From NCBI GenBank assembly GCA_964247055.1, contig OZ176054.1, positions 1,612,001 through 1,676,000 on the forward strand: a DNA stretch of 64,000 bases. Direction: 5' to 3'. The notes below the pieces were generated by a model. The model did not search any database. It saw only the letters and a program-made list of their open reading frames with translations, and had not been told where the DNA came from. Source of the DNA: Paragordius varius (lineage: Eukaryota > Animalia > Nematomorpha). Positions 1-59,076 of the stretch are shown piece after piece. Both the position numbers and the translations under genes were made by a program. Every line of letters begins with the position of its first letter. The first letter of the stretch is position 1.

Positions 1-108
1 TAACGTCCTCTCATCCCCACCGTTCTTTCCAATCACTCCTTCGGCCTCCCCTTCAACTCGACTACTCCCACAACTACAACATAACGTTAAAAATGTTTTA
101 AAGTTCAT
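1..108 (-). CDS. Partial exon 1 of a second copy of the poly-Cys PAK/STE20-like kinase (runs off the left edge of the window)
   Basis: ATG at 108 reads MNFKTFLTLCCSCGSSRVEGEAEGVIGKNGGDERTL; 34 of 36 residues match exon 1 of the gene starting at 25256. Confidence 0.8.
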   Translation of the reverse strand, partial: MNFKTFLTLCCSCGSSRVEGEAEGVIGKNGGDERTL

Positions 109-450: not shown

Positions 451-1547
451 GTTGTTGTTGTTGTTGAGCTTGTAATCGGTTATCGACCATTAGCGATTTT
501 GTAGGAAAACTTCCTCCATTCGGTTCTGTCGTGAGCTTTTTGAGATAGTTTTTGCAGTGACAATTTGGAAAGAAGATTCTTCTACCCAGCGAATACGTCT
601 GCGTCCTCTTCCTCTCTTACCATTAACTTTTCCTAACCTAATATCCTTTTCCAAATTGCCCCGAATAATGTGTCCAAAGTAACCGAATTTTCGTTTTATT
701 ATTTTACCCCGAAGCGTTGTTTGTGCATTAATTTTATTTACAATGTCGATGTTCTTTATTTTGTCCTTCCATGTTATACCAAGTATTTTTCTCCAGCAAA
801 ACATTTCAAAAGCGTTTATTTTTTTTCGTCTTCAATTTTGATAGTCCAGCTTCATCCGTATAACATGATAGGAAATATTAATGCGTTTATTAGGCGGATT
901 TTTTTAAGGGTTATGTCATGAGATTTCCATATCTTGTAGTGTGAGGCTAGAGCGCATTTGGCGATAGCTAGTCTTCTTATTTCTTGGGAACTGGAGCTTG
1001 AGTTGTTGATGATGCTTCCAAGGTATGTGTATTCGTTGACTACTTGAATTGTTTCGTTAATAATCCGAAGCGAGTCATAGGAATGAGGGGAGTTTATATG
1101 CAATATTTTAGTTTTGTTGAGGTATAATGTAAGATTGTATTTTTTGCACACATTTATGAAAGTTTGGAGACTGTTTTCGAGGTTTGTTTGTGAATTTGCT
1201 AAGATAACCGTGTCGTCTCCGTAGTGGAGAGTCGTCAGAGGACCCCCTACTTTTATTCCTGGCAGATTTAGATCCCTCATGATACATTCCAAATATATGT
1301 TGAACAACATGGGGGATAAAATGCAGCCTTTACGCAGACCTATGTTCATTGGACTCCAAGAGGTCGGGCCATGCGGGGTGTTAAGTGATAGTAGGAGTTG
1401 GAGTATATGGATTTAATTAGTTTGATTAAGTGATCGGAACTATTTGTTTATGGGCCTTCCAGAGAATGTCATGTTGAACGGTACCGATAGGCCACATATA
1501 GATACGACATCGAACAATTTTCACTGGATACAATCAGCCTTTTAGAA
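451..1547 (-). mobile_element. 5'-truncated, frameshifted RTE-clade non-LTR retrotransposon (RT C-terminal half)
   Basis: GLRKGCILSPMLFN, HYGDD, YTYLGS and RKILGITWKD...YFGHIIRG...GKRGRGRRRIRW motifs in ORFs 852-1349 and 490-804; (CAA)n 3' tail at 451-466. Confidence 0.9.
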
Positions 1548-8095: not shown

Positions 8096-8601
8096 TAAAA
8101 AATAATTTTTTTAATATTTAGCATAAAAGCAAAAAATACATCAATAAACTCTATAGAAAATTTAACTGATTTTGTCAGATGAGGTAATCATCGATTAGCT
8201 TTCCATTCACCATCACAATAAGTTTGTGGGAAAGTACACTGAAGTTCCGAAAATTATGTTGGAAAATAGGATAGCGCATGATGATAAGCATAAGCTAAGA
8301 TGCTGTTTATTAACCTCCATATATGAGAGGAGAGAGGTTTTTTAAGAAGTTCTACTTAATATTTTTTGTTATTAATTAATTCAGTCCATAATTGTATGAT
8401 AAATAATTTTTGTTGAAACAAATTCCCAAGATATCAATTGAGGCACATTGATTTCATTTAATATGGTTCACAATGAGATGGTTAAATAAGAGTATACCTT
8501 CTGACTATTCCGTCTCACCCAAGTCATAAAAATTCTTTTCTTCCACTTGGCACAGCAGCCCTTACGATTCCTTTCAGAACCGCCTGACGTCCCCTCATCA
8601 C

Positions 8602-8946
8602 TTTTAACACTGTGTTGTTGTTGTGGTAGTTGTCGTGTGGAAGGAGAAGCGGAAAGAGTGATTGGGAGGAATAATGGTGAGGAGAGGACGTCAGGGGATT
8701 CTGGAAGGAATCACAAGGGCTGCTGTGCCAAGTGGAAGAAAAGGTTGAATTTCTCCCAAAAGAAGCAAGCGGGTGTTCCGTTGAGTAAGACTTTTTAAAT
8801 TTCTTGTTTGCTTTTAATGCAAGTTTAATTCATCTTAATGCTGATTAATTAATGTTTAGATGGCGATGAGAGTGAGGGTGAGCGTCGGAGTAACTGGTTG
8901 GAAAGCTTGAGGAAAACGTTCCGTAAATTAACGGAATTAAACTGAG
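8602..8946 (+). pseudogene. Kinase paralog type Q, exons 1-2, ATG deleted (repeated at 10197-10539)
   Basis: LTLCCCCGSCRVEGEAE...KGCCAKWKKRLNFSQKKQAGVPL, GT-AG intron 8785-8859, exon 2 (N)GDESEGERRSNWLESLRKTFRKLTELN* with the same 87-nt length as exon 2 of the main gene. Confidence 0.8.
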
Positions 8947-9091
8947 GTGAAGTTATGCTAACCGATTTCTTGTTTACTATTACATAAAGGTTAAAATTAA
9001 TATACTCTAAAATTCAAGGTTTATTTAAATTTAATTGTTTAGATGTATAAAATAATTGCCAAACAAAAATATCACAATATAATTATAATCT

Positions 9092-10196
9092 ACTTTTGCG
9101 GGCTCAAAAAAATCACCAGCGCCCTCCTCTTGCGGACATAAAGTACTGTGGCTAACTAAAAAAGATAATAATTTTTTAAAATCTTACAAGGAAATGGTGA
9201 AAATAGTGTGGCAAAATTTATTTAATTCAAACCTTTTTAAACATGATGGGGGAATTTATTACATTAATATATTTAGTTAAGTTAAAAAATATCCATCAAT
9301 AAAAAACACCCCTGTTTGTTATATATTTTGTTATTAATAAATTTTTTTGCATAATTACCTGATTCATCTATAAGTTGTTCTTGCTTTGCATGTGTACGTA
9401 ACGTAAATATCATGTAATAAAACATCAATGACAGGTAATATTTTTTTTATAAATACTATTTAAAACTATCTTAACGCTAATTTAACAGATACGTTGGGAT
9501 GAATAAAGCAAAAAATGAGATTAATGATTTATTTGGTATTATAATCTTGTAGGTACAAAAACCGCCGTTGTTTTCTACCTATATGAATGAAAAACATTAA
9601 AATCTAATTTAATCTCTAAGTTTAGACTTTTGAGAAATGATAAACCATTTATCAACAAGTTTTCTTGATTTTTTAAGAATATTTCTTAGCGTTCTATTTA
9701 TTAGTTGGTAAGGTAACTTTTTACAAGCATATTAAGTTAAATTAAATTATGGTTATGATGCAAATCTAAATCAAAAATAAAATTTTTAAAAGCAATATTT
9801 TGTAAAAAGGGGTTTTTCTTTTGGCATATTACCCATGTTTACTAGACTAATTTTTATGTTTGAACAGTAAAATTTACCAATACCGTAACAGAAAATGTTT
9901 AAAAAATTTTATAGGTTTATTACTTAGACCGGGATGCCGCTTCTTACTAAACACCTTCCTTAATCTTCCCGACCAACTGCGCCGACCCTCACCATCACTC
10001 TCAGCCTCGCCATCTAAACATTAATTAATCAGCATTAGGATGAATTAAACTTGCATTAAAAGCAAGCAAGAAATTTAAAAAGTCTTACCCTGCGGAACAC
10101 CCAATTGCTTTTTTCGGAAGAAATTCAACCTTTTCTTCCACTTGGCACAGCAGCCCTTACGATTCCTTCCAGAATCCCCTGACGTCCTCTCATCAC
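9092..10196 (-). pseudogene. Kinase paralog type R, exons 1 (partial)-4, copy 1
   Basis: DERTSGDSGRNRKGCCAKWKKRLNFFRKKQLGVPQ / DGEAESDGEGRRSWSGRLRKVFSKKRHPGL / DAKQEQLIDES (acceptor lost) / SHSTLCPQEEGAGDFFEPAK at homologous intron positions. Confidence 0.8.
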
Positions 10197-10683
10197 ATTA
10201 ACGCTGTGTTGTTGTTGTGGTAGTTTTCGTGTTGAAGGAAAAGCGGAAATAGTGATTGGGAGGAATTATGGTGAGGAGAGGACGTCCGGAGATTCTGGAA
10301 GGAATCACAAGGGCTGCTGTGCCAAGTGGAAGAAAAGGTTGAATTTCTCCCAAAAGAAGCAAGCGGGTGTTCCGTTGAGTAAGACTTTTTAAATTTCTTG
10401 TTTGCTTTTAATGCAAGTTTAATTCATCTTAATGCTGATTAATTAATGTTTAGATGGCGATGAGAGTGAGGGTGAGCGTCGGAGTAACTGGTTGGAAAGC
10501 TTGAGGAAACGTTCCGTAAATTAACGGAATTAAACTGAGGTGAAGTTATGCTAACCGATTTCTTGTTTACTATTACATAAAGGTTAAAATTAATATACTC
10601 TAAAATTCAAGGTTTATTTAAATTTAATTGTTTAGATGTATAAAATAATTGCCAAACAAAAATATCACAATATAATTATAATC

Positions 10684-11781
10684 TACTTTTGCGGGCTCAA
10701 AAAAATCACCAGCGCCCTCCTCTTGCGGACATAAAGTACTGTGGCTAACTAAAAAAGATAATAATTTTTTAAAATCTTACAAGGAAATGGTGAAAATAGT
10801 GTGGCAAAATTTATTTAATTCAAACCTTTTTAAACATGATGGGGGAATTTATTACATTAATATATTTAGTTAAGTTAAAAAATATCCATCAATAAAAAAC
10901 ACCCCTGTTTGTTATATATTTTGTTATTAATAAATTTTTTTGCATAATTACCTGATTCATCTATAAGTTGTTCTTGCTTTGCATGTGTACGTAACGTAAA
11001 TATCATGTAATAAAACATCAATGACAGGTAATATTTTTTTTATAAATACTATTTAAAACTATCTTAACGCTAATTTAACAGATACGTTGGGATGAATAAA
11101 GCAAAAAATGAGATTAATGATTTATTTGGTATTATAATCTTGTAGGTACAAAAACCGCCGTTGTTTTCTACCTATATGAATGAAAAACATTAAAATCTAA
11201 TTTAATCTCTAAGTTTAGACTTTTGAGAAATGATAAACCATTTATCAACTTGATTTTTTAAGAATATTTCTTAGCGTTCTATTTATTAGTTGGTAAGGTA
11301 ACTTTTTACAAGCATATTAAGTTAAATTAAATTATGGTTATGATGCAAATCTAAATCAAAAATAAAATTTTTAAAAGCAATATTTTGTAAAAAGGGGTTT
11401 TTCTTTTGGCATATTACCCATGTTTACTAGACTAATTTTTATGTTTGAACAGTAAAATTTACCAATACCGTAACAGAAAATGTTTAAAAAATTTTATAGG
11501 TTTATTACTTAGACCGGGATGCCGCTTCTTACTAAACACCTTCCTTAATCTTCCCGACCAACTGCGCCGACCCTCACCATCACTCTCAGCCTCGCCATCT
11601 AAACATTAATTAATCAGCATTAGGATGAATTAAACTTGCATTAAAAGCAAGCAAGAAATTTAAAAAGTCTTACCCTGCGGAACACCCAATTGCTTTTTTC
11701 GGAAGAAATTCAACCTTTTCTTCCACTTGGCACAGCAGCCCTTACGATTCCTTCCAGAATCCCCTGACGTCCTCTCATCAC
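10684..11781 (-). pseudogene. Kinase paralog type R, exons 1 (partial)-4, copy 2
   Basis: Near-identical tandem copy of 9092-10196; forms the left arm of an imperfect palindrome with 11853-12935. Confidence 0.8.
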
Positions 11782-11782
11782 A

Positions 11783-13002
11783 TTAACGCTGTGTTGTTGT
11801 TGTGGTAGTTTTCGTGTTGAAGGAAAAGCGGAAATAGTGATTGGGAGGAATTATGGTGAGGAGAGGACGTCCGGAGATTCGGGAAGGAATCGAAAAGGTT
11901 GTTGTGACAAGTGGAGGAAAAGATGGAATATCTTCCGAAAAAAGAAAATGGGTGTTCCGCCGGGTATGATTTATATTTATTACATATTTACTTAAACTTA
12001 ACCGCGAATACATTAAAATATGATTAATGTTTAGATGGCGAGGCTGAAAGTGATGGTGAGGATCGGCGCAGCTGGGCGGGAAGCCTGAAGAAGGTGTTTA
12101 GTAAGAAGCAGCATCCCGGTTTAGGTAATAAACCTATAATATTAATTAAAAAAATTTATGTTACGGTATTGGTAAATTTTACTGTTAAAAACGTGTAAAT
12201 TAGTCTCGTAAACATGGGTAATATGCCAAAAGAAAAACCCTTTTTACAAAACATCGCTTTTAAAAATTTTATTTTTGATTTAGATTTGCATCATAACCAT
12301 AATTGTTTAATTGTGTTTAATATGCTTGAACAAAGTTACACACAACTTATATAAAGAAAAATTCTTAAAAATCAAGAAAATTTTATAATAAATGGTATAT
12401 CGTTTCTCAAAAGTCCTAACTTAGAGATTAAATTAGTATAGGTTTTTCACTCATATAGAAAGACAATGGCGGTTTTTGTGCCTACAAAATATTTACCCAA
12501 TACCAAATACATAATTTAAATCGCATTTTTTATTTTATTCATCCTAAAGTATCTGTGAAAATATTTATTATAGTTTAGCCAAATAGTTTTAAAAAAAATG
12601 ATGTTTATTACATGTTATTTACGTTACGCATTTCAGATGCAAAGCAAGAACAACCCATAAGATGAATTAGGTAATTAAAAAATATATTAATAAAATATAA
12701 AACAAACTGGGGTGTTTTTATTAATAATATTTACTCAACTAAATATATTAATTTAAATAATTCGATATTTTCCATTTCACTATTATAGTTTCAAAGTTTG
12801 ATATTAAATAAATTAAGCGACACTATAAATCTCTAAATTGTAGATTATAGAAAATAATTTTTTTTATATGTAGTTTACCACAGTACTTTGTATCCGCAAG
12901 AGGGCGCTGGTGATTATTTTGAGCCTGCAAAAAGATGTACCCTGCGTATCATTTGCATTGAGATGGTTGATGGAGAACCATCCTACACTACTATCCACCC
13001 AG
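11783..13002 (+). pseudogene. Kinase paralog type S: exons 1-4 fused to a fragment of kinase exon 10
   Basis: Exons 11783-11963, 12035-12124, 12637-12670 (34 nt, frameshift) and 12874-12936, followed directly by LRIICIEMVDGEPSY (compare LGIICIEMVCGEPPY). ATG is missing. Confidence 0.85.
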
Positions 13003-20528: not shown

Positions 20529-23500
20529 TCATACTTTATATGTTGCCACAGTGTTAGCAAGCCATACTGTTGGGGCGGCTATTTCAAGATAAGGATGCTA
20601 AAACACATTGCAAAAATGATGAATGAGTTTAATTTCAACAGCATTGTAATAAATTTACATACCCCCAGTAGTTTAGAGGCGGACGGTCGTTTCGCGACAT
20701 TCTCCAAGCAAGAAGCTATGAATTCGTAGAAAACCTGGCTAGTGGGCGGAATCCATGGCTTGCCCTGGGCTATCATTGTTTGCTTGATCTAAGAATTATA
20801 ATTATATATATTATTAATTAGCATATAATTAAAAATATTTTAATTACCAATGATCAAACGTTATGCTTCTAAAATCCATTATTTGTGCGGTAACGACGAA
20901 GGTGTATACAAATATAAATAAATTTATTGAAATCTCAAATTTACACACAAAGTTATCGCCAGGAAGGATGTTAAAAAATTAACTTAAAACACAGTAAAAC
21001 AAAATACACATGTGAACAAATCAATAATATTAATAACACCTGGCTGGGATCGAGATACTTATAAGGGGGTTCTCCGCAGACCATTTCAATACAAATGATG
21101 CCCAGGGCCCATATATCAGCTTTATTGGAGATCAGTCCTGAAAAATACATTTCCTCGGCCAGATAACAGGCAGTGCCTGCCACCCTGACAGAGGTATTGT
21201 TGTCATAGATGGATACACCAAAATCAACTATTATGATATATATATATAGATACATGTTTGTGATTAATTTTTCTATGAAAGATAATGTGATGGGAACAAC
21301 AGAAAATTCAATTTTTTATTAATAATACATTTATGGCTAAATAATACAGATTATTCAATTTAAGGCTTGAATCAATATTTTTTCCTATAAATTGAATAAC
21401 TTTGATAATATTTTGGGTTATGAAATTTAAATATATTACTCAGTTTGACTGTGCCATTGGTATCAATCATGATATTGGTAGATTTGATATCCCTGTGAAT
21501 AACACTTCTGGAATGAATGAACGATAACGCTTTCAAGATCTATAAACAACAGGGTTGACAAAAAAATATTGAAAAAACTGTAATAATTTACATTAACACT
21601 TTCAAATATATTATAACGCTGTTTAAAATTGAATATAGAGTAAAACAGACACAGTTACGGGAAAAATTAAATAATTAGAATATTTTTATAGTAATATGTA
21701 TTAATTTCCTCATGGTTTGAATTGTATTACCCATAAAAAATTATACCAAAAGTTCTTCGTTCCATAAAAAATTAATGAAAGTTATCTCAACTTAAAAAGC
21801 TAAATAATAACTATAATATATATCAATATTTATAGTCCACTCCGAAATTCTCACATTTTTGGTTGCGGAAAAAATCTTTTACCTTTTGTGATAATTTTAA
21901 CAACTAAATTATAATACTAAAAAATTTAAAAGCATATTTTGCTTCCAAATATTGTAATATTTTTGAAACATATATGGTATTGATGGAAACGGTATAATCA
22001 ACATTAATTTTATAAGAAAGATAATATATATTTAACTTTAATTTGAAGGTGAACAAATCTAATTAAAATTTCAGAGGACAGATTTTTCTGCTGCATCAAT
22101 TATGTAGAAGAGGTGTTTTTACATCATATATAAAGGCTTTTGAATGAGTCATGCTTTAATAAACCATTAAATGCGTTTACATATGATTAAAAATTTAAAT
22201 TGCAAAGGGTCAAAATGAAAGAATTACGCATTATGAAATTGAACAGTGCTTTTTAAAATAATTTTTAATCTTTAATCAGCTATTTAAAATTTTTATAGTG
22301 CATGATACTAAAAATGCTTTGGGACGTTAACAAAATTCAATCATTTGTATCAAAAATAATTCATAAGTGAACATATTAAGTTGAATTATATGGTCCAAAT
22401 AAAAAGCACCATGAGATCCCTGATACATCTTTCTACCAGAAATAATATTTTTAAGCAGAATATTCTTGTTTCCACTGTGTATGAATACTTTTACATCAAT
22501 GTTAAAGTGCAGCATACATCATATTTAATTCAAATAAACATGTAAAAAGCTCTACATTAATGTGAAAAATAAAGATCATTTAGAATCTGATTGCTTAATG
22601 TAAGGATTTAAAAAACCTGATGACAGATTTGGGCTATTAAAGATTCCCAAAGCTTCCGACGAGCCAAATCCCACAAAGTAACCCCATCGATGTTCTCCAT
22701 AATGATCTGTACAAAATCAAAGAAGCAAAGTACTAAAGAGAGAAAGACACATATTTCAAATTTTGATTCAGGAAAAAAAATAACTGCTTACCCATAAACT
22801 GTCACCCGAAAAACTGGAGCTAATATATTCGACAATGTTGGGATGTTTTAGATTCTAAAGTATAAATATTTCATTGATCGTATCGTCATCAAGTTGTTTG
22901 TCCTTAAGTTTAATCTTTTTTAATGCTACCGTAGATTTATGATATTTGGCTAGGAACACAGATCCATATGCCCTAAATAATAAATATATAGTTTAGTAAT
23001 ACTATGCTTTTCTAACAGTATTTATAAAAAATTAATACCCTTCTCCAAGTTTTTCGCAAACATTAAATTTGGACGGGATGTCTTTGGTAATCTTAATTAT
23101 GCCAAAATAATATATGAAAATTGTTAAATGGTTTTCTAAAAATAAAATTCAAAAATCGAATTAATTCAAATCTATTAAAGTTTATCATATAATTCATACC
23201 CACCTCTTTTTGTTGTGGATCGACTGCATCATGATTAGGAACTAAAATATTGATATTAATAAATTGTGAGAAATATTCATGTAATAATTATATATGATAC
23301 ATGAGTTTTCAGGGCAATAACTTTTAGAGAAGCCAAAGCTAAGAATAGCTTTTGCTTTTCCAATAGAGAACTATTTACAAACTGCTTGAATTATAAGATA
23401 AATTCCAAACAAATTCAAAACTAAACCATTATAATTATTATAATATACTTCGAAAATTTTAACTTGCCTTACTTTTTATATTAAATAACTTTTTAATAAT

Positions 23501-25256
23501 AAAAAATGTACAGTTTCCGAACTCAAAATGGAGTTAAGTCTTCAATAAAAAATTAAAATTAAGTAATTCAAAAATTATGTGTACATATGCGATAATTGAG
23601 TGACATAGTTTAAAGCGTATTCAGCAATAGATTATCCAGATTAACTCAATGTTATTTTTAAGAATAGATTTCTTTCTTGTTATATATCCTTCTGACCTAA
23701 ATAATTCCCGGCCGAATTTTGTCTTTTTTATTTTTATTAAAAATAATATTTAGCTTTTTACCGGACAGAACCTGTTTTAAAAATAAATTCATTTGATGAT
23801 TTTGATTTTACTATTATATTTGGAAATCAATCATCGTAGTGCAAGTAATTTTAATCGAGGGGATGGCTTTTAACCCACTTTGAAAAGGGTGTTTTAAATA
23901 GATTTTACTTGCAAATTAGCATAGACCCATCGACACACTAATTATATAATTTTATATTTTTTGTTAAATCTCTCTGAGTTCCGACACTAGTACATTATCC
24001 TATTATATTATGTTTTGCTTTAAAAATTATCGTAAATATATACTTGTTTTTGGAGGCTCAACAAAATCACCAGCGTCTGGCGGAGACAAGATACTGTGGA
24101 CTATATAAAAAGAAAATGTGTTTGTATAATTATCTTACAATTAGGTGACAAAATAGTCCCCCATTATTTGTTTATAATCAAACTTTTTAACCTTAATGGC
24201 GAAATGGAACATAACCAAAATATTTTAATTATTTTATTGATCATATAATATGTAAAATTTAAATATGCTTTAAAAAATATAAATTATTTGTCACCTGATT
24301 CATCTTCGGACTTTTCTTGCTTCGCATCTAAAAATAACGCAAATTACCATCTTAAAAAACATCATATGTGTAAAGATATCATGTTTCAGCCAAAAGAAAC
24401 ATTTTTTCCAGCAAACACAACATTTTTCTGTCTACACGCAACATTTTTTTAGTTGTCTTTGATTGAAAAATGGTATATTTGCTTGAAAACATGTTGCGTT
24501 TAGAATGTTTGTTGCGTTTGGTCGAAACAAATTATGACTGAAAAATGGTTTATTATCTAAAAAGAGTTGAGTGAAAGTTTTTAAATGTATGCAAATTTTA
24601 AAACATATCGAAAGTTAACACTTAATTGAGAGGTGAAAAAACATATGCATTAAATCGTCTTTCTTGATTAGGCGTTTTTATTTTAAATATATATTACTCA
24701 ACATAAGTTATCTAAAGTAACTTAAAACATCCATGTGCAAATATTATCCTAAGTTATGGATTTAAGATTCGTTTCTTTGGTGAAAACAAAAATCGAAGCG
24801 CCCAAATAGTTATAACTAATAAAGGTGTCTTAAACTATATTTGAATATATTAATTTTAAAAATGATTTGGTAAAAAACGGTTAAAAATGTTTTATTCAAA
24901 TTATCACCTGTACCGCGATGCCGCTTCTTTCTAAACACCGCCTTCAGGCTTTTCACCCAGCTGCGCCTATGCTCGCCAGAACTTTCAGCACCATCTAAAC
25001 ATTAATCATGTTTTAATGTATTTGTGGTTAGGTTTAGGTAAATATGTTATAAATATTTAAAATTACCCGGCGGAACGTCCCCTTTCTTCTTTGGGAAGAA
25101 ACTAAGCCTTTTCTTCCCTTTGGGACAACCGCCCTTGGTCCTTCCCGCTAACGTCCTCTCATCCCCATCGTTCTTTCCAATCACTCCTTCGGCCTCCCCT
25201 TCAACTCGACTACTCCCACAACAACAACATAACGTTAAAAATGTTTTAAAGTTCAT
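20529..25256 (-). CDS. PAK/STE20-like Ser/Thr kinase, 12 exons, 403 codons, with one in-frame TAG (young pseudogene, null allele or base error)
   Basis: Exons 25256-25067, 24994-24908, 24327-24295, 24100-24044, 23241-23204, 23091-23039, 22972-22792, 22706-22617, 21539-21440, 21227-21040, 20788-20663, 20597-20529, all GT-AG and phase-compatible. Motifs: GEGAYGSV, VALKK, INEI, HPNIV, HRDIKSTN, DFG, DIWALG, GEPPY, KRPSA, HPYL. TAG at 22855-22857. Confidence 0.88.
24385..24550. repeat. Degenerate miniature relic of the 21-bp foldback family in kinase intron 2
   Basis: ACATTTTTTCCAGCAAACACAACATTTTT... followed by inverted GAAAAATGGTATATTTGCTTGAAAACATGTTGCGTTT, resembling the 54073-55451 arrays. 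Confidence 0.55.
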
Positions 25257-25607: not shown

Positions 25608-26721
25608 GTTGTTGTTGTTGTTTTTGAGCTTGTAGTCGATTATCGACCATTAGCGATTTTGTAGGAAAACTTCCTCCATTCGGTTCTGTCGTGAGCTTTT
25701 TGAGATGGTTTTTGCAGTGATAATTTGGAAAGTGATAAGATTTCGTCTACCCAGCGAATACGTCTGCGTCCTCTTCCTCTCTTACCATTAACTTTTCCTA
25801 ACCTAATATCCTTTTCCAAAGAATTGCCCCGAATAATATGTCCAAAGTAACCGAATTTTCGTTTTATTATTTTACCCCGAAGAGTTGTTTGTGCGTTAAT
25901 TTTATTTACAATATAGATGTTCTTTATTTTGTCCTTCCGTGTTATACCAAGTATTTTTCTCCAGCAAAACATTTCAAAAGCGTTTATTTTTTTTTCGTCT
26001 TCAATTTTGATAGTCCAGCTTCATCCATATAACATGATAGGAAATATTAATGCGTTTATTAGGCGGATTTTTGTTTTAAGGGTTATGTCATGAGATTTCC
26101 ATATCTTGTAGTGTGAGGCTAGAGCGCATTTGTAGCTAGTCTTCTTATTTCTTGGGAACTGGAGCTTGAGTTGTTGATGATGCTTCCAAGGTATGTGTAT
26201 TCGTTGACTACTTGAATTGTTTCGTTATTAATCCGAAGCGAGTCATAGGAATGAGGGGAGTTTATATGCAATATTTTAGTTTGTTGAGGTTTAATGTAAG
26301 ATTGTATTTTTTGCACACATTTATAAAAGTTTGGAGACTGTTTTCGAGGTTTGTTTGTGAATTTGCTAAGATAACCGTGTCGTCTGCGTAGTGGAGAGTC
26401 GTCAGAGTGTGACCCCCTATTTTTATTCCTGGCAGATTTAGATCCCTCATGATACATTCCAAATATATGTTGAACAACATGGGGGATAAAATGCAGCCTT
26501 GACGCAGACCCATGTTCACTGGACTCCAAGAGGTCGGGCCATGCGGGGTGTTAAGTGATTGTAGGAGTTGGAGTATATGGATTTAATTAGTTTAATTAAG
26601 GGATCGGAAACTCCTATTTGTTTAGGGGCCTTCCAGAGAATGTCATGTTGAACGGTATCGATAGGCCATACATAGATACGACATCGAACCATTTTTACTG
26701 GATACAATCAGCATTTTAGAA
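25608..26721 (-). mobile_element. RTE LINE fragment (duplicate of 451-1547)
   Basis: GLRQGCILSPMLFN, HYADD and YFGHIIRG motifs; (CAA)n tail from 25608. Confidence 0.9.
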
Positions 26722-49335: not shown

Positions 49336-52300
49336 TTATGTTTTTCTTCTATTTATTGAGCTTTTAACACTGTTTAAGCCATTGATGAAAGGCTTGAGTT
49401 TGGACCAAATTACATTGAGCATTTCCTTGAAACTAGATCTGAATTGTTCGCTCATAGTACAATAAACTATGAAGTTAATAGAGCTATTTATAAGTGCCAT
49501 AGTGTCCATTAAATCACCTAAAGGACTGTAAACCATGTTAAAAAAGGGTTGTCCCAACAAATCCTTGATACACAGTAAGGCAAGGAGCCCACTAGGAAAT
49601 TCAGTTACCAGGAAACACAATAAAACAGTGAGCAAAAGTTGGGATGTTTTATCGCCTCGGTATCTACGCCTCGGGACTCTCCGCGAAAGATTAAGGTTAA
49701 GATTTTGTATGGCAACATTTGGGTTATTAGTTAAAGGAACAGCTCCTTCTTCGTTTCTTGATGCGAGTGAACCTGTGATACCTTTGTCGTGATGGCTATT
49801 GATTGCGTTTGTGTTTTGTAAAAGTAAAGTGCTTACTTTATTACGGGCTCGCTGATAAATTGAACGGTCAATCCTAACAGGGGGTATCGAAGGATGATCA
49901 TAAGAGACTGTTTTGATCATATTTGGAATATTTGACTGTTGATTTATAAAAATTGTTTTAGCAGCTGTTTTGCTGCCAATATCAATATTTTGTAGTTCTT
50001 CATGTTTTTCCCCATCTTCAACCTCATTGGGTGAAGAAGAAAGAAGTTGGGCTGTATTTAATACAAGAGATGATTTTCGTTTATAGTTGTGTGCCTTGTC
50101 TGCTATTGCTTTTGAGGAAGAGTATCTTACCTTTGGATAACCTGCTAATACAAAAGAAGTATGGTGATTTTTAGCCGTAGACATTCGTCTTTCATTTTTA
50201 TGGTTTGGACTTTTGACTAGAAATATCCGTTTGAACCAATTGTTGCCACCATTTAAATTGGTTGAAATAATTTTATTGTTCGGTTCAGCTAGGGAGGATG
50301 ATCGTTTTATCCATCCATTTATGACTACCTTATTATCCAGAGCGTTACTATAATCATTGTTCAAAAACATGAGTGAATTTTTATCACGTGAAACCTCCTC
50401 ATTAGATTTATTAAATTGTTCTTCTGCTATTTCTTTGGTATCATCATCAATGTCATCTGCCTCGGGTATGATTTGATAATAGCTCGAAGGATCCGGTGGT
50501 ATATATTTGGCTTGTTTAAAATTGGTGTATGGTACATACTCGTTCACGATATCATTACCACTGTCCCTGTACAAATTTTGGAAACCTTTGAATAGGGATG
50601 TCGCCTTATTCTTATTCCTAAGGCTGATAGATGATTTTTTATGTCCAATCTTGTATGTTCCATGATTACCCCTCCCCCAATCACCAAATATCTGCAGGGG
50701 GAACTTATAATGTGTCCTTTCACCATATTTTTTACGTTTCCTTTGTGCAGGACAATTCTCTTCTATCGTCGTTAACAATTCGGCTTCGTCAATTGTGTTT
50801 AGGGTTTCTCGCCCACTGTAAAAGGTGGCGGCTGTACTTCTCTTTTTATCCAAGCTATTTGTTGGACCTAACATCATTAGAGAAGAAGAATTCGGTGGAC
50901 CCATTTGTGGTCTGCTTGTGCCAATGTTAGCTCCTCCAATTTTTAATTTTTGATGGCGATAATTTGCACGGCAAATCACGTAGATGAGAAAGGCTGACAT
51001 AATGGTTAACATTAGACATGGTAGGAGTTTACCAATTACACTAATCATATATAATACAAAATAAATGTAAGGTAAAAATTTTTTGGCATGTATTATATAG
51101 TTTTAAATTTTGCAAAACTTAAAACTTTTTATTTTTAGCTCATCGAATTTTCGATCTTCAACACTGTCTCATTTAACCTTTTTCATTTGACAAGAATTAT
51201 TATTCAACATCAGTTGTAAAAGCATATCACATCCTTCCACCCCAATGTATGTTCTTAGGAAAATATGCTCTTACATTTTTAAAAAATACTTATATGCCGT
51301 TGATAAAATAATTTCTTCCAACTTATTATAAAATTTGTTTTCCTCTAATAATTGAGAAATCATTTTATGTAGGTTTGATTAATCTGACATTTAAAGCTAA
51401 TCTGTAATTTTAACCGAAATTGAACGCAAAAGTAATAAGCTTAATTAAAATTGAACTATAATAAAAACCGTAAAATACATGCTAATTCGATAATATACAA
51501 TTTGAGTAAGTACACATTGCAAATTTTTGATTAAATATTGTCCAGATAGTATATACACCACACGCATTAATATTGGCTACAATAGTAAAGAGTGAGGAAA
51601 TAAACTTTAAGCCAATAACATTACCCTTTTCTGAATATGCTATCCGGCACTAATAAATGCGAAAAAAATAGCAATGCAAACTTATTCAAAATGTATTTTG
51701 CCAAAATGACATTAACACTACGATTCAAATTGGGGTATCTAAATACCCCAGACTAAATTTAAATTAAAATTTTTAAAAAACTACTGAAGGAAACGGTCCC
51801 AATTTAAATTTATGCTTCTATCCTGATAAATATTAGATGAATATGCCAAAATATATTGATTAAATTTTGTTTTGAAAAAAAAGTTCCAACTCAAACTACT
51901 TCAACGCCATTTATATTTTGCAAAAATTTTGCAAAATATCGTTTTCATTTAATTTTAAGGGTAAACTAAAGCTTATTTTTTATATAAATTACATCAAACA
52001 TTGATAGAAATAGAAATAGCGGTATATTTTGTATTATTTTTAATTTTACAATTTGACATATGTCACGTTGACTAAATTTTTACCTTTCAGTTTTAGTTCA
52101 AAATAAGTAATTTCAAGTATTTTTGAATAAAATTTTTTATATATTTCTGTTTATTAATGTTATATAAGTGCAAAATTTTGCCATGGTTTTGATTGCTTCC
52201 ATACTTTTTAAAGTATTTGATTTTAAACAGGCCTGGGGTATCCAACTACCCCAATTTGAATCGAAGGACTAAAATGAGTGTGTTGCATCCAAGTGTTAAC

Positions 52301-55300
52301 CGTAAAGAAAAAGAATGCGCAAATATTTCATACATATGTACACTCTTTACTGTAAATGCTATCCGACATTAATTAGTGCGAAAAATTAGCATTGTATTTT
52401 TAATTACAATGCTGTAAAAAATATATTTTGATATACCTGTACATGATGAAATTCATTTGGTGGAGATTTGCATGTTTTGCATTTGTAGAAGTGATATATA
52501 AAATAGAAGGTTTAGGAATCATTCGTAATTCCCTAAGCATGGTTGTTGTTTGTATGGGAAAACTACTATTAGTTTCATTATTGTATATGATTTTAGTTTC
52601 TACCTGATCCTTAATTAAACTATGGACAGTGCTTGTTCTTCCTACTGTTTGCGTGTCAAGTCCCGTTAAATCAAATACTGATCGAGAATTTTTCATTTTA
52701 ATTGAAGCATTTTGATAAAAACTAATATTCTTGTATGCGGTTAACCTACTTGTCCATTGTGTTTTATTTAGATTGAATTTAAAACCGTTGGTAGTATTAT
52801 CATTAGCAAAGGTTTGATAAAATTTGTTGGCATTTTTTAAGAGTGTTTTTGGACCAGGATCGTAGGGTATGATGGTGTAACTCAGGTAATAGGGTAAACA
52901 ACACAAACTCACACAAACGTATATAGTGACTAAGCAAAGTGCAGTTGTACGATTGTCAAAATAACGTTTTCGGAGTGTCGGTTGAGACAAGGACAAACAT
53001 CGAAAGGCGGCCAGAAACACGGTTACCCAAGTTGAAATGGTGTGAGCCAACATGGTTAGATTGAAATGAAAGAGGATGAAATAGGCCCAAGCATGGGAAT
53101 GTAGGTTTCCCTTGACCATGGGTATGTACATGTAGGAAGCAAAAATTAAATAACTCATCATAACAAGTATGTCGGCAACCGCAATACCTAAATATCAATG
53201 ATATAATTGATTTAATTGTGTAATTATATGATCAAATTCTACATATATAATAAATTATATAGTTATTATTTATCTGGAACAGGGCTTCCTTAACTATGGG
53301 TCGCGACCCCATTTGGGGTCGCCTAGCAAAATTATGGAAAATGTTTTTTAACTTGTAAAATTATTGTTATAAAGAAAAATAACAATAATCGTAGATAAAT
53401 ATATTCTGAAAAAGTATTTATATTAGATCCGATCATTATAATCTATATATTTATAAAAATGGAAAATGCTGGCTTTGTGATCTGTTTCCGGAAAACCGGT
53501 AGACCCATTCAAATCCCAAATGTCAAATAAATATTATCATTAATGAATGCCCCGACAATAGCCCTTTTTTTGAATTAGGCTCCCAGTTCGGGCCCACCCC
53601 GTGTAAAAACGGTTTTTTTTGAAAACAGAAGTCCAGAAAAATCTTGTCTTTGAGACAATTTTACGGTAAACGTGTTGTACCTTTCGATTTTAAATGTGAT
53701 TATTTTACTTTTTTTCGATTACGCCGAACCTAGTCGGCTCTTTTTTAATTTAGGCTCTCTCTTTACCCGTTTCCCCGTAAAATCTCATTTTTTTAAAAAA
53801 AAACTAAATAATTTTTTCCCCAGGGTATGAGACCGTTAAAATTCACTGAGGATTCGAGTTATTTTCTGTTAAAAGGCAAAATTTTAGTCTAGCGTTTTTT
53901 TAATAATGGTCGTTAGGTAAATAGATAGCCGCTAAAACTGCGCCACTATATAAAAATTGCGTTGTTTTGGAGCCAATTTACAGAAATTTATGAAGCCATA
54001 TGAGCTTATTAAAAGCTCGAAATATTACCCGTAACTAGGTAAAAATTAAGGTCGGTTTTTTATTAGCCGTTATACCATTTTTCATGCAAAAACATCATTT
54101 TTTCAAGCAAACGCACCATTTTTTCAAGCAAAGGCAACAATTTTTCAAGCAAAGGCAACAATTTTTCAAGCAAATGCAACATTTTTTCAAGCAAAGACAA
54201 CATTTTTTCAAGCAAACGCAACATTTTTTCAACCAAACGCAACATTTTTTCAACCAAATACAACATTTTTTCATCCAAACGCAACATTTTTTCAACCAAA
54301 GACAACATTTTTTCAAGCAAAAACAACACTTTTTTTAATATTACAAAGAATTATTATTTATTGTTAATTATAAATTATTTATTAAATTTTAAGTAAATGT
54401 AATTTATTTTTAGCGTTGAATTATGATTTTTATCGTTTTATCATCAATATTGGATGGTAAAATTGATTTTCAAACATTTTGAATTTGCCCATAAATTGCC
54501 TTATTTATTTATATTAATTATATTTATCTTTTACAATTTTGGTTTCGCCTAATCAAATTATTTATTTTGCACTTCAACAGTGTCCTTGAACACTTCAAGT
54601 TGGTCCTTGAACATTTCCAGTTGGTCCTTGAACTCTTTAAATGGTCCTTAAAATATATAATTTTTGTTTTACCCTAATTTTTGCAAATGAAAATTTTTTA
54701 ATAACCCAGAAAACTCATATATTTTTTTCGTGTTATAAATATCTAAAATTATTTTAAGAAATTAATATACGGTTTGTCAAAGATTAAAAGATGATATCGA
54801 TTTAAAATTAATGTTAAATAATAGAAAATAGGTTAAAAACAATAAATTAGATAAATTATTTTCGATTTAATTAATAAAAGTTAAAAACAAAAAAGTCAAA
54901 GGACCAACTTGAAGTGAAGGACAACTTTAAACTTTTAAAGACACTGTTGAAGTGCAAATTAAATAATTTGATTAGGCGAAACCAAAATTGTAAAAGAAAA
55001 ATATAATTAATATAAATAAATAAGGCAATTTATGGGCAAATTCAAAATGTTTGAAAATCAATTTTACCATCAAATATTGATGATAAAACGATAAAAATCA
55101 TAATTCAACGCTAAAAATAAATTACATTTACTTAAAATTTAATAAATAATTTATAGTTAACAATAAATAATAATTCTTTGTAATATTAAAAAAAGTGTTG
55201 TTTTTACTTGAAAAAATGTTGTCTTTGGTTGAAAAAATGTTGCGTTTGGATGAAAAAATGTTGTATTTGGTTGAAAAAATGTTGCGTTTGCTTGAAAAAA

Positions 55301-57841
55301 TGTTGCGTTTGCTTGAAAAAATGTTGTCTTTGCTTGAAAAAATGTTGCATTTGCTTGAAAAATTGTTGCCTTTGCTTGAAAAAATGTTGCGTTTGCTTGA
55401 AAAAATGGTGCGTTTGCTTGAAAAAATGATGTTTTTGCATGAAAAATGGTATAATTTGGGGCCTTTATGCCATAAAACGCCATCATATACCGATTATTTA
55501 GTGTTGAGGAATTTTTTCGAATAAGACGATGGTATCAAAGATGATTCCAAATATTTGCCCTATAAAGGCAAAGAATTTAACTCAGCGCTTTTTCCATATA
55601 GGTCTATGGGTATGGGTCTACCAGCTTAAAACGGAGACGCCATACAAAATAGGCGTAATTTTGAAGCTAATTCTCAAAAAACCTATGAAGGAATACGAGT
55701 TCAGTTAAACACATTTCTGAGGAATTCGTAAATATCATTCTTTCCTTTCCACAAATGATTTACTTTTTATATCCCTTGATCCCAGCTGTATGAACGAAAT
55801 TTCAAATTAAAACTTTTAACCATGATTTCGTAAAACGAAAATTTTAAAATAAATCCAAATAGTTGAATATTACCTTCAATAAGGGACATATTAAATATGG
55901 TCATTTCGAGTGAACAATATTTTAGCCTTTGCAAAAATCCGTAAAAGAATAATTTAAGACATTCTTTTTAATGTTTATTATTATTTTTATCTCCAACAAC
56001 TCTATTTATTGCAAATTACTAGGAATATTTATCGGTGAAACTACGCCATATCGAGTGTGACAGGGCCTGCTGTATCTTGTATAATAATTTACTATGAATC
56101 AGAAAATGTTATAGAAATTTATAAAAAATGGAGATTTATTTTTGTCAATCTCTCAAAACCGAAATAATCCTGATAAATATTATCAACAAAATTTCTGTTA
56201 TTTCGAAGAAACTATTATTTTTCTTTTATATTTGTTGGGGTCGTTAAGAAATTCGCAATCATAAATGGGGTAACAAAAGTTTAAGAAGCCCTGATCTGGT
56301 AAATCTAAAAAGGCCAGTTATTGACAATATAAGAGCTTAACGTCTCCGAACAATATAAATTTTTTGTCAATCATTCATGAACAAAGATTATTTTTAAAAA
56401 CATAATTTGTTTAAAGACGAGAATATCTTAGTAGCAAAATTCTAGGTATTGGACAATAAATATAAATTATTATATATTATTTATGCTTAATATTAATTTA
56501 TGTAGCGTGCATCTCACAAGATTATTTGACAAAATATTATCAAAAATTGGTCCTTTTAGACATTTTGATAAGAATGTGAATAACTGTTTCTTTTACAAAA
56601 TTTGAGAGTAAATGTTAATAACCTTTGTTTTTTGTAACACAATAATAACTAATGAATTTTAGGGAAGAGACACAATTGCATTTATAATATTGATAATATG
56701 ACAGAAATATATATCCTCAATTAGTGGTATAAGGCAGCTATAACATATTTAATTTAATTCAATTATTATCGCTCAGTTAAAAATCTTGTATGCTGTTGGG
56801 ATCTTATTGGTTCTCAGGATATATATCATAAAATGGCACATTTTTTGAGCTATAATTTATACTTTATATAAATTCTGCAACTTCTAGGATTGTAAATAAA
56901 TATTTTAACATAACAATATCATTTATTAGTATTTTTTTAACAAATTGATTTTTTTATTCTTATTCAGAAACTTTTCCAATTGATCAAAATATGATTGATA
57001 TTTTTATGGATTACTGCTAACTAGCATTTACTAACAATTTTTCATTATACCAAAAAAACATTTATATCAACTTATTGCGAATTTATAAAAATTGATTTTG
57101 ATAAAATAATAATTGTGATACTACGTAATTATCCTATATATAAATTGAAAAAAGTGATTTATCTATAACTTATATTTGTAATACTCTTAATACACTATCA
57201 AAACTAAAATATCAAACAATATCTCAATCAGGTCGCATGGGAATATGAATTGTTATAAATCTGATGACAAAGTTTTGTATTGGTGTTTTAAATGAATTAA
57301 AATTTAAAATTTTCTTATGTTGATATAAAACATTAGTGAAAACATCGATATTTCAAACTTTAATATAGTTTTTTTTAAAGATCATATATGAATGAGTGTA
57401 AAGCGTAAATTGAGTCTCAAAATTCTTACGATTTTTACATTTTTGGCTGAAATAAATCAAGACCAGTTAGCTAGACGAGAAGATACCGCTGTAATCGAAA
57501 AAAAACGGTCATAATATATTTTCATAAAAAATTGTGTCTAAACGCATGATTATGTGCTAAATAGACCTTGCGGGGGGGGACTCAGTTTTCTGATTCTAAC
57601 TAAATTTCGAAATTTGGCAATCCATTTTTTAAGAGTAAAAAAGAAAATTAAATTATTTGTCTTTCGTAAAATTATTTGTAGCCAAGAAGTTTCCAATTAA
57701 AAATGATGCACACTGTGTTAATTGCCAACAAAATAATGCAAATTGACCTAATGATCGATAAAATAACTGAAAAACTAACGAGTTGTAAAGAAAAGTGAAG
57801 AGGACAATGATTTTTTTGAATGAAGACAATACCAATCATTG

Positions 57842-58911: not shown

Positions 58912-59076
58912 TTCAACTATATTATTGTTGTTCTCTCCTGTTTGTGAATAGTTTTTTGACAAAGTAACTTGTAGTTACGATATTTGGCAAAAAATAATTA
59001 TTACTTCATAAACATGGTTGATGATTTGTTCAGTTATTTTCATCATAATCCGAGATTACATTGTTAAAAATATACG

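What the first reader, a model, noticed from the sequence alone, without database searches (positions are those of the whole stretch)
20529..25256. Expanded PAK-like kinase family with a poly-Cys/polybasic N-terminus instead of CRIB
Seen: four small 5' exons missed by the ORF track splice in frame onto the kinase domain. They give MNFKTFLTLCCCCGS... followed by basic, amphipathic segments (KGKKRLSFFPKKK; SWVKSLKAVFRKKRHR), and paralogs add a second GCC motif. The kinase domain is PAK-like (HRDIKS, IEMVxGEPPY). Established: PAKs are regulated through an N-terminal CRIB/autoinhibitory domain, which is not recognisable here, and Cys clusters beside basic runs are typical S-acylation and membrane anchors. 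Inference: a lineage-specific, lipid-anchored, GTPase-independent STE20 kinase family with at least four sequence types in this window.
Basis: partly seen in the sequence, partly recalled or inferred. Interest (0 to 1): 0.7.

Follow-up and report, generated by a model that had tools for sequence, protein, structure and literature searches.

The report
CRIB-less, poly-cysteine PAK-derived kinase family
This AT-rich worm genome holds about a dozen copies of a signalling kinase that descends from the PAK family but has swapped PAK's GTPase-binding front end for a cluster of cysteines beside basic residues, probably a fatty-acid membrane anchor; the copy in this window carries a premature stop codon.

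Summary
The gene is real. A 12-exon minus-strand model (25256-20529), GT-AG at all 11 introns, encodes the quoted N-terminus plus a kinase domain with all catalytic residues.

- This copy has an in-frame TAG (22857-22855). All eight paralogues have a sense codon there, and contigs of three other samples read AAG.
- Five, not four, short 5' exons precede the kinase.
- The window holds one complete gene; the other "types" are truncated exon 1-2 fragments.

Genome-wide there are nine full-length copies (eight on contig C5, one on C3). Six look fully intact. All keep the exon layout, the reading frame and dN/dS below 1, also in the N-terminal exons.

No CRIB is detectable, although the genome's three canonical PAKs were found with it.

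PAK descent is supported by six intron positions and phases shared with the genome's own group-I PAK, a PAK-type C-terminal tail and the tree; grouping with MST/YSK is rejected.

A sister group on C8 (about 43% identical) starts with MKFIKFFKKSCCCCCC, so the cysteine start is old.

S-acylation, membrane anchoring, GTPase independence and splicing remain inference: no RNA data were found. The scan noted the same kind of gene on other DNA of this genome (s1-267140). New variant of a known kind.

The parts
25067..25256 (-). Exon 1 (190 nt, ends in phase 1). ATG at 25256 with an in-frame TAA 15 nt upstream. Encodes MNFKTFLTLCCCCGSS..., an acidic stretch, then GGCPKGKKRLSFFPKKK.
   Evidence: 23 matches in the genome. 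The start is conserved in all nine full-length copies.
24908..24994 (-). Exon 2 (87 nt, phase 1-1): basic amphipathic segment ...RRSWVKSLKAVFRKKRHRGT.
   Evidence: Present and open in all nine copies, with conserved ttag|at acceptor and cag|gt donor.
24295..24327 (-). Exon 3 (33 nt, phase 1-1): acidic DAKQEKSEDES.
   Evidence: 33 nt in all nine copies.
24044..24100 (-). Exon 4 (57 nt, phase 1-1): VHSILSPPDAGDFVEPPKT.
   Evidence: 57-63 nt in the paralogues, always frame-preserving.
23204..23241 (-). Exon 5 (38 nt): IPNHDAVDPQQKE, the last exon before the kinase domain.
23039..23091 (-). Exon 6 (53 nt, ends in phase 2 inside the second Gly codon of the glycine loop): ITKDIPSKFNVCEKLGE(G).
   Evidence: The intron position and phase match the genome's own group-I PAK.
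22792..22972 (-). Exon 7 (181 nt): glycine loop, the VALKK lysine and the alpha-C glutamate. It contains the in-frame TAG.
22855..22857 (-). Premature stop codon TAG, codon 192. Copies B and C have AAG (Lys) there; copies D-I have ATG (Met).
   Evidence: Contigs of runs X1, X3 and X5 all read T at 22857 on the + strand, which gives AAG.
22617..22706 (-). Exon 8 (90 nt): IIMENIDGVTLWDLARRKLWESLIAQICHQ.
21440..21539 (-). Exon 9 (100 nt): catalytic loop, ILKALSFIHSRSVIHRDIKSTNIMIDTNGTVKL.
   Evidence: Pfam Pkinase E = 3.9e-11
21040..21227 (-). Exon 10 (188 nt): DFG, a short activation loop without the usual phospho-acceptor Thr, GTACYLAEE, IEMVCGEPPY.
   Evidence: Pfam Pkinase E = 2.9e-10
20663..20788 (-). 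Exon 11 (126 nt): IKQTMIAQGKPW...AKRPSASKLLG.
20529..20597 (-). Exon 12 (69 nt including the TGA stop): PAK-type C-terminal tail HPYLEIAAPTVWLANTVATYKV.
   Evidence: The genome's group-I PAK has an exon that starts at the same point, HPFLNIAKPLISLKPLIIAAKEANNKH.
1..108 (-). First 36 codons of exon 1 of the neighbouring intact copy B. The rest of that gene lies left of the window.
8537..12132 (.). Head-to-head array of truncated exon 1(+exon 2) fragments (LTLCCCCGS...KGCCAKWKK...). No start codon and no kinase exons.

Best explanation
The region holds one copy (A) of a lineage-restricted family of protein kinases that arose by DNA-level duplication of a group-I-type PAK gene and then diverged quickly.

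The family kept the PAK kinase exons and C-terminal tail. PAK's regulatory half (CRIB and autoinhibitory region) is replaced by about 135 residues encoded by five short exons:
- a start of the form M-x-F-x-x-F followed by 3-6 cysteines;
- acidic spacers;
- a second Cys or Cys-Cys next to a Lys/Arg/Phe-rich run;
- a basic amphipathic segment.

Most likely mechanism (inferred, not shown): the hydrophobic and basic residues give weak membrane affinity. The cysteines are then S-acylated. The kinase is thereby held at a membrane without needing Cdc42 or Rac, so recruitment by a GTPase has been replaced by a built-in anchor.

Catalytic residues are intact (Lys, alpha-C Glu, HRD, Asn, DFG). The activation loop is shortened and lacks the usual phospho-acceptor Thr, so control of activity must differ from PAK.

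The family grew by tandem and segmental duplication. Copy A, as assembled, has a nonsense codon and is either a very young pseudogene or null allele, or an assembly error.
For: Gene model and family
- 12 exons, all GT-AG.
- Nine full-length loci have exon 1 lying 3.4-4.2 kb upstream of the kinase exon on the same strand in 9 of 9 cases.
- Exon gaps are multiples of three in 23 of 24 cases, against about a third of intron gaps.
- dN/dS is 0.07-0.37 for the kinase part between subtypes and among A/B/C (0.58-1.63 among the near-identical F/G/H), and 0.28-0.51 (0.75 in the F-H pair) for the N-terminal exons.

No CRIB
- PF00786 found three canonical PAK loci in this genome but no family locus at E <= 1.
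- Exon 1 has no Pfam hit.
- A PBD profile built here scores -1.7 to 0.7 bits on the family, against 96-134 bits for controls and a shuffle 95th percentile of 1.4.

PAK descent
- Six intron positions with the same phases as the genome's group-I PAK, L012.
- Its group-II PAK lacks at least three of them.
- Shared exon-12 start and tail motif.
- In the tree the family plus the C8 group is one clade (100/98) on the PAK side (79/95).
- AU tests: held together with PAKs p = 0.24; with MST/YSK p = 0.017.

Age of the Cys start
- The C8 sister genes begin MKFIKFFKKSCCCCCCP, followed by a GTGAGA donor, 4.3-4.7 kb upstream of their kinase exons.

The stop is private to copy A
-.

Lineage restriction
- The exon-1 word search found nothing.
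- Exon-10 phmmer against 1.84 billion cluster representatives gave at most 53% identity over that exon, and at most 38% over the whole domain.
Against: - No RNA evidence: no listed run is RNA with coverage, and the laid contigs are DNA-like. Splicing and expression are therefore inferred.
- No acylation predictor or signal-peptide predictor was available. In the C5-type copies the start (MNFK + TFLTLC(F)C..G) also has the outline of a signal peptide.
- The activation loop lacks the Thr found in all canonical STE20 rows (Arg/Lys instead), and APE is AEE. The proteins could therefore have weak or altered activity.
- Tree support for the PAK side is only 79/95. A clade with the genome's own group-I PAKs is borderline (AU p = 0.054).
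- Three of the nine copies are damaged: A has the TAG, I has a roughly 14-nt deletion that removes the glycine loop and the donor, and D has GEG changed to GER.
- dN/dS among the youngest copies F/G/H is 0.6-1.6, based on few changes.
Confidence: 0.55

Rival explanations
1. The N-terminus is a cleavable signal peptide (n-region MNFK, h-region TFLTLCCCC or TFLTLCFCGSCCVGG, small residues before a cleavage site). On this reading the kinases enter the secretory pathway and might be secreted, conceivably towards the host of this parasite.
For: By reading only: the C5-type starts have one Lys followed by 9-15 uncharged, mostly hydrophobic residues and then Gly/Ser. The family is expanded and evolves fast, as secreted parasite families often do.
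Against: - The sister group's start, MKFIKFFKKSCCCCCCPVTDE, has four lysines spread through the would-be hydrophobic core. What the two groups share is the Cys cluster with aromatic and basic residues, not a hydrophobic core.
- The rest of the protein is an ordinary cytosolic-type kinase with scattered cysteines.
- No predictor was run.
Confidence: 0.13
2. The family is mostly evolutionary debris: recently duplicated, repeat-associated copies of a decaying PAK duplicate that are not expressed. The Cys cluster then has no function.
For: - Copy A has a stop, copy I a deletion and copy D a glycine-loop change.
- Many truncated fragments of exon 1-2 and of exon 10 are scattered or arrayed.
- The copies lie in segmental duplications that include LINE pieces.
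- There is no RNA support.
Against: - Six copies keep open frames across 12 exons with all splice sites.
- Exon gaps preserve the frame.
- dN/dS is well below 1 between subtypes whose dS is 0.7-1.0, in the kinase and in the N-terminal exons.
- All catalytic residues are kept.
- The Cys start is kept across the C5/C8 split.
Confidence: 0.12
3. The Cys clusters and basic runs serve another purpose than lipid anchoring, for example metal or redox sensing, or nuclear import through the KKR...KKK and RKKR runs.
For: Runs of 4-6 Cys plus a further CC could bind metal. The basic runs resemble nuclear import signals. Both points are by reading.
Against: - The position at the extreme N-terminus next to hydrophobic and basic residues is the usual context of S-acylated anchors such as GAP-43 (established knowledge, recalled).
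- The number and spacing of the cysteines vary between copies (CCCC, CFC, CCC, CCCCCC). That fits acylation better than a fixed metal site.
Confidence: 0.1

Closest known systems
Group-I p21-activated kinases (PAK1-3; the genome's own copy at G000:C2:1.4643-1.4712 Mb)
   Same: - STE20 kinase domain with HRDIKSxN and IEMxxGEPPY.
- Six intron positions and phases in the kinase half.
- A last exon that starts at HP[FY]L and a tail of the form HP[FY]L.IA.P...L...A..K.
- Basic runs N-terminal of the kinase. PAK1 and yeast Ste20 use polybasic motifs to bind membrane lipids (recalled knowledge, not tested here).
   Different: - No CRIB/PBD.
- Only 36-39% identity in the kinase domain, whereas this genome's PAK is 58% identical to insect PAKs.
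- The activation loop is 6-7 residues shorter, with no phospho-acceptor Thr.
- GTPYWMAPE has become GTACYLAEE.
- Poly-Cys N-terminus.
C8 sister group of the same genome (L009, L010; HRDLKC, MKFIKFFKKSCCCCCC start)
   Same: Same kinase exon borders, a poly-Cys first exon several kb upstream, and one clade with the family (100/98).
   Different: 42-44% identity. Six consecutive Cys after a Lys-rich start. APE is AYD. Exon 1 ends in phase 0, not phase 1. The exons between exon 1 and the kinase were not modelled.
N-terminally S-acylated proteins (GAP-43, PSD-95) and lipid-anchored Ser/Thr kinases such as CaMKI-gamma/CLICK-III (PMC10435254)
   Same: The Cys cluster lies next to hydrophobic and basic residues at a protein end. 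A kinase whose site of action is set by lipidation.
   Different: There is no sequence homology. CaMKI-gamma is lipidated at its C-terminus (prenyl plus palmitoyl). Acylation of the present family is not shown.
Tandemly expanded 'PAK 3-like' genes of manakin birds (XP_039238671, P0003)
   Same: This is the best full-domain database hit (38%), and it is also a lineage-specific, multi-copy PAK derivative. It sits next to the family in the tree, with weak support (84/32).
   Different: No poly-Cys N-terminus was seen in the retrieved sequences. The grouping may be long-branch attraction.

Membership tests
p21-activated kinase (PAK) | CRIB/PBD domain (Pfam PF00786) N-terminal of the kinase | tested here: not met
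   The six-frame PF00786 search of the genome hits three canonical PAK loci and no family locus at E <= 1. A PBD HMM built here scores -1.7 to 0.7 bits on the joined N-termini, which is the shuffle level; controls score 96-134 bits.
p21-activated kinase (PAK) | Kinase domain groups with PAKs within the STE20 group | tested here: inconclusive
   The family lies on the PAK side of the tree (79/95) but outside the canonical PAK clade (99/97). AU tests: held with PAKs p = 0.24, with the genome's own group-I PAKs p = 0.054, with MST/YSK p = 0.017.
p21-activated kinase (PAK) | PAK catalytic-loop signature HRDIKSxN and the GEPPY motif | tested here: met
   HRDIKS[TN]N and IEMV.GE.PY are present in all nine copies.
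p21-activated kinase (PAK) | Gene structure and C-terminal tail of group-I PAK | tested here: met
   Six intron positions and phases are identical to L012. The exon-12 start and tail motif are shared. Exon ends of two MST-like genes of this genome, taken from match ends, fit at most three of the six positions.
p21-activated kinase (PAK) | Activation-loop phospho-acceptor Thr (Thr423 in PAK1) | tested here: not met
   Arg/Lys at that column in the family, Asp or Val in the C8 pair, Thr/Ser in all canonical rows.
p21-activated kinase (PAK) | Autoinhibitory segment that overlaps the CRIB | not tested
   No profile for it was available, and the joined N-terminus could not be handed to the search tools.
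N-terminally S-acylated membrane proteins | Cys cluster within the first ~20 residues, flanked by hydrophobic and basic residues, with no transmembrane helix | tested here: met
   By reading: MNFKTFLT[LM]C(C/F)C(C)GS in nine copies, MKFIKFFKKSCCCCCC in the C8 pair.
N-terminally S-acylated membrane proteins | Thioester-linked fatty acid on the cysteines; membrane localisation lost on Cys-to-Ser change | not testable with these tools
   Needs acyl-RAC or acyl-biotin exchange, and imaging.
Secreted proteins with a signal peptide | n-h-c tripartite N-terminus with a cleavage site | tested here: inconclusive
   The C5-type starts fit loosely by eye. The C8-type starts do not, because lysines lie inside the core. 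No predictor was available.

The most novel reading that the evidence does not exclude
The family could be a parasite-specific set of kinases whose Cys-rich start directs them into the secretory route or onto secreted vesicles. They would then act outside the worm's own cells, for instance in the insect host whose behaviour horsehair worms alter. This would be analogous to the expanded exported kinase families of apicomplexan parasites.
Probability: 0.06. Interest if true: 0.85.

Novelty: new variant of a known kind. Interest (0 to 1): 0.45.

Why it matters
PAKs are defined by recruitment and release from autoinhibition through Cdc42 or Rac.

This would be a natural case in which a PAK duplicate dropped that switch and, if the inference holds, replaced it with a built-in lipid anchor. 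Cell biologists have done the same experiment artificially with membrane-targeted PAK1 (recalled knowledge).

The anchor-like start has been kept across two subfamilies that are only about 43% identical. The canonical activation-loop Thr has been lost. Together these make the family a test case for how a kinase scaffold is rewired after duplication.

It is also one of the few expanded, fast-evolving signalling families seen so far in this poorly studied parasite genome. Its value is limited by the lack of any expression or biochemical data, and by the fact that the copy in this window is broken.

Tried and rejected
- **Decayed CRIB in exons 4-5.** By eye, 'SILSPPDAGDF...HDAV' recalls 'ISLPSDFEHTIHVGFDAV'. 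A PBD profile scored it at shuffle level, and the exon borders do not match the CRIB exon of the genome's own PAK. Rejected.
- **RNA evidence.** The run search found no RNA holder. The one possible RNA run laid (X11) gave only a spurious contig, and the other three runs are DNA-like contigs that span introns. Splicing could not be tested.
- **Relatives of exon 1.** The word search found no candidate and the ESM Atlas feature search gave no usable hit.
- **Classification by single exons against PDB.** The result was ambiguous: Aurora A, DLK, PAK6, MST3 and PAK1 all scored 31-37 bits.
- **TAG as a reassigned codon or a small intron.** Rejected. The paralogues have AAG or ATG at that codon, and the only upstream GT would delete the VALKK lysine.
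- **More full genes in the C8:6.2-6.3 Mb cluster.** Those hits are isolated exon-10 fragments.
- **Literature.** Four searches found no described PAK-type kinase with a palmitoylated or poly-Cys N-terminus, and no study of hairworm kinases.
- The joined (spliced) protein has no reference. It was therefore not sent to any database search, Pfam scan, structure prediction or fold search. Those tools were run exon by exon, by reference. Joined models were built only inside scripts, from the stored files, for local alignment, dN/dS, profile scoring and the tree.
Full report
**What is in the sequence**

The window is AT-rich animal DNA (22-36% G+C). It is G000:C5:1612001-1676000 of a 110.6-Mb assembly in 44 contigs. 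Earlier agents of this scan took the genome for a horsehair worm's (s1-316091); I did not test that.

Reading the minus strand from 25256 gives a 12-exon model with canonical GT-AG at all 11 introns. The exons are:
- 25256-25067
- 24994-24908
- 24327-24295
- 24100-24044
- 23241-23204
- 23091-23039
- 22972-22792
- 22706-22617
- 21539-21440
- 21227-21040
- 20788-20663
- 20597-20529

An in-frame TAA lies 15 nt upstream of the ATG. Exons 9 and 10 match Pfam Pkinase (E = 3.9e-11 and 2.9e-10). Five short exons, not four, precede the exon that opens the kinase domain.

Exon 7 reads EIFIL*NLKHPNIV, with TAG at 22857-22855. The eight paralogues have AAG (copies B and C) or ATG (copies D-I) at that codon.

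I laid contigs of three other samples under two organism labels (X1, X3, X5). All read T at 22857 on the + strand, which gives AAG. None shows the TAG.

The best contig differs from copy A by two letters and from copy C by one. It therefore cannot be assigned to copy A with certainty.

As assembled, copy A is a null allele or very young pseudogene, or the base is an assembly error. A-B and A-C comparisons show no excess of amino-acid changes (4 non-synonymous against 12-15 synonymous in the kinase part). If the stop is real, it is recent.

**The family**

The exon-1 peptide has 23 matches in the genome, almost all between 1.12 and 1.64 Mb of contig C5, plus one on C3. Exon 10 has nine close matches (55-100% identity). 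Each lies 3.4-4.2 kb downstream of an exon-1 match on the same strand.

I fetched all nine loci and modelled them. All have the same 12 exons and GT-AG sites; the exception is copy I, whose exon-6 donor was deleted.
- Copies B, C, E, F, G and H are fully open (403-428 aa).
- Copy D has the second glycine of the glycine loop changed to Arg.
- Copy I lost about 14 nt, including the loop and the donor.
- Copy A has the TAG.

Copies A and B lie in a tandem duplication that also copies at least 5 kb upstream, including a LINE-like piece. They are 91% identical including introns.

The window itself holds only one set of kinase exons. The other 'types' are the start of copy B at 1-108, and truncated head-to-head exon 1-2 fragments at 8537-12132 that lack a start codon.

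**Are the 5' exons really part of the gene?**

No RNA data could be found, so the evidence is evolutionary.
- The exon-1-to-kinase linkage holds at 9 of 9 loci.
- Exons 2-5 are open, with conserved splice sites, in every copy.
- Exon lengths differ between copies only by multiples of three. In four pairwise comparisons, 23 of 24 exon gaps are multiples of three. The exception lies in the variable 3' end. Among 225 intron gaps the share is 28-38%.
- Nei-Gojobori dN/dS for the N-terminal exons is 0.28-0.51 in all but the near-identical F-H pair (0.75), including pairs with dS of 0.7-1.0. For the kinase part it is 0.07-0.37 among A/B/C and between subtypes. Only the near-identical F/G/H trio gives 0.6-1.6, on few changes.

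**No CRIB**

A six-frame search of the whole genome with Pfam PBD (PF00786) finds three canonical PAK loci (C1:11.75 Mb, C2:1.464 Mb, C3:7.257 Mb), each with PAK kinase exons nearby. It finds nothing at any family locus at E <= 1.

A PBD profile that I built from 76 PAKs and this genome's own CRIBs scores the joined N-termini at -1.7 to 0.7 bits. The shuffle 95th percentile is 1.4 and positive controls score 96-134. A resemblance I saw by eye between exons 4-5 and a CRIB is therefore not supported.

**Is it PAK-like?**

By identity alone the answer is unclear.
- Best full-domain database hits are 37-38%: a bird 'PAK 3-like' expansion and an amoebal MST-like kinase.
- Identity to this genome's own PAKs is 34-39%.
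- Single exons against PDB were ambiguous.

Three other lines point to PAK.
- All six introns of the kinase half have the same position and phase as in the genome's group-I PAK gene, L012. They lie in the glycine-loop codon (phase 2), after ...LW, after CRE/CHQ, one base after VKL (phase 1), after PLR/PSQ, and before HP[FY]L. The group-II PAK lacks at least three of them. Exon ends of two MST-like genes fit at most three (these come from match ends, so are approximate).
- The last exon encodes a PAK-type tail: HPYLEIAAPTVWLANTVATYKV, against HPFLNIAKPLISLKPLIIAAKEANNKH in L012.
- In a maximum-likelihood tree of 38 kinase domains the family sits on the PAK side of the STE20 group (79/95), outside the canonical PAK clade (99/97). 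The AU test does not reject a clade with PAKs (p = 0.24). It is borderline for the genome's own group-I PAKs (p = 0.054). It rejects a clade with MST/YSK (p = 0.017).

I read this as a PAK duplicate that evolved fast. Because the defining CRIB was tested and not met, I do not file it as a PAK.

**An older poly-Cys start**

The nearest kinases in the genome are three loci on contig C8 (42-44% identical, HRDLKC) with the same exon borders. They form one clade with the family (100/98).

Two of them have a first exon 4.3-4.7 kb upstream on the same strand. It encodes MKFIKFFKKSCCCCCCPVTDE...NPQPI and is followed by a GTGAGA donor. The exons between it and the kinase were not modelled, so the link is inferred from position.

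What the two subtypes share is M-x-F-x-x-F, lysines and a run of cysteines. This argues that the Cys start is functional and predates the split. It also argues against a classical signal peptide, because lysines sit inside the would-be hydrophobic core of the C8 form.

**Kinase competence**

The lysine of VALKK, the alpha-C Glu, HRD, the catalytic Asn, DFG and the subdomain-XI Arg are kept in all copies.

The activation loop is 6-7 residues shorter than in PAK, MST or TAO. The column that holds the phospho-acceptor Thr/Ser in every canonical row holds Arg/Lys in the family, and Asp or Val in the C8 pair. APE is AEE. Activity is plausible, but its control must differ from PAK.

**Mechanism**

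Shown:
- gene structure, family size, purifying selection;
- lack of CRIB, PAK-type gene structure;
- conservation of the Cys start.

Inferred:
- S-acylation of the cysteines, helped by the neighbouring hydrophobic and basic residues;
- constitutive membrane tethering;
- independence from Cdc42 and Rac.

The inference rests on established knowledge that Cys clusters beside hydrophobic or basic residues at protein ends are typical S-acylation sites. It also rests on PAK1 and Ste20 using polybasic lipid-binding motifs, and on artificial membrane targeting activating PAK1 (recalled, not checked here). A lipid-anchored Ser/Thr kinase is known in CaMKI-gamma (PMC10435254).

**Novelty**

The word search with exon 1 found nothing. 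Exon-10 phmmer against 1.84 billion cluster representatives found no protein above 53% identity, and none of the retrieved proteins has such an N-terminus. That library evidently lacks this species, so absence in other hairworms is not shown.

Four literature searches found no described counterpart. A first-stage note (s1-267140) records the same idea on another piece of this genome, and s1-316135 covers the fragment array.

**Limits**

The joined spliced protein has no reference. It was therefore never sent to a database search, Pfam scan, structure prediction or fold search; those steps were left out, and the tools were used exon by exon. Joined models were built only inside scripts from stored files.

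Noticed in passing
G000:C8:6235000-6330000 and C8:5953000-5954200 (L015-L017): About twenty isolated copies of the exon-10-like kinase piece of the C8 subtype lie here on both strands, many with stops and with no other kinase exons nearby. They are amplified single-exon fragments, perhaps carried by a repeat.
   Followed up: partly
window 8537-12132: A head-to-head (palindromic) array of truncated exon 1 plus exon 2 copies. All begin at 'LTLCCCCGS' and so all lack the first 5-6 codons. It is the same kind of fragment amplification as on C8.
   Followed up: partly
L009:2496-2597 (G000:C8:432495-432596) and L010 (G000:C8:359397-359498, minus): First exon MKFIKFFKKSCCCCCCPVTDE... of the sister kinases. 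The 39 nt upstream of the ATG are identical in the two loci, although the loci are only about 77% identical overall.
   Followed up: partly
window 490-1349 and 25640-26529: Reverse-transcriptase-like LINE fragments lie just upstream of exon 1 of copies B and A. They are part of the same tandem duplication (92.6% identity over about 4 kb).
   Followed up: partly
window 24379-24530, 54063-54338, 55157-55524: A short tandem repeat that is open in several frames (FFKQ / LEKML / CLKKCC) sits in intron 2 of the kinase gene, and twice, inverted, near 54-55 kb. Contigs of other samples break there (loose ends at 24470).
   Followed up: no
window 21040-21227 and the paralogues' exon 10: The activation-loop phospho-acceptor Thr of PAK, MST and TAO is replaced by Arg/Lys in all nine copies, by Asp in one C8 gene and by Val in the other.
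   Followed up: partly
window 49336-51048, 52400-53161, 58369-58962: Long single-exon ORFs; the first two have weak Srw-type GPCR matches (Pfam PF10324), the third was not scanned. One includes a very long third-loop-like insert. Unrelated to the kinase.
   Followed up: no
G000:C6:9466298-9468604 and C6:9478932-9481611: A tandem pair of MST-like kinase genes. Several of their exon matches are flagged with an in-frame TAG.
   Followed up: no
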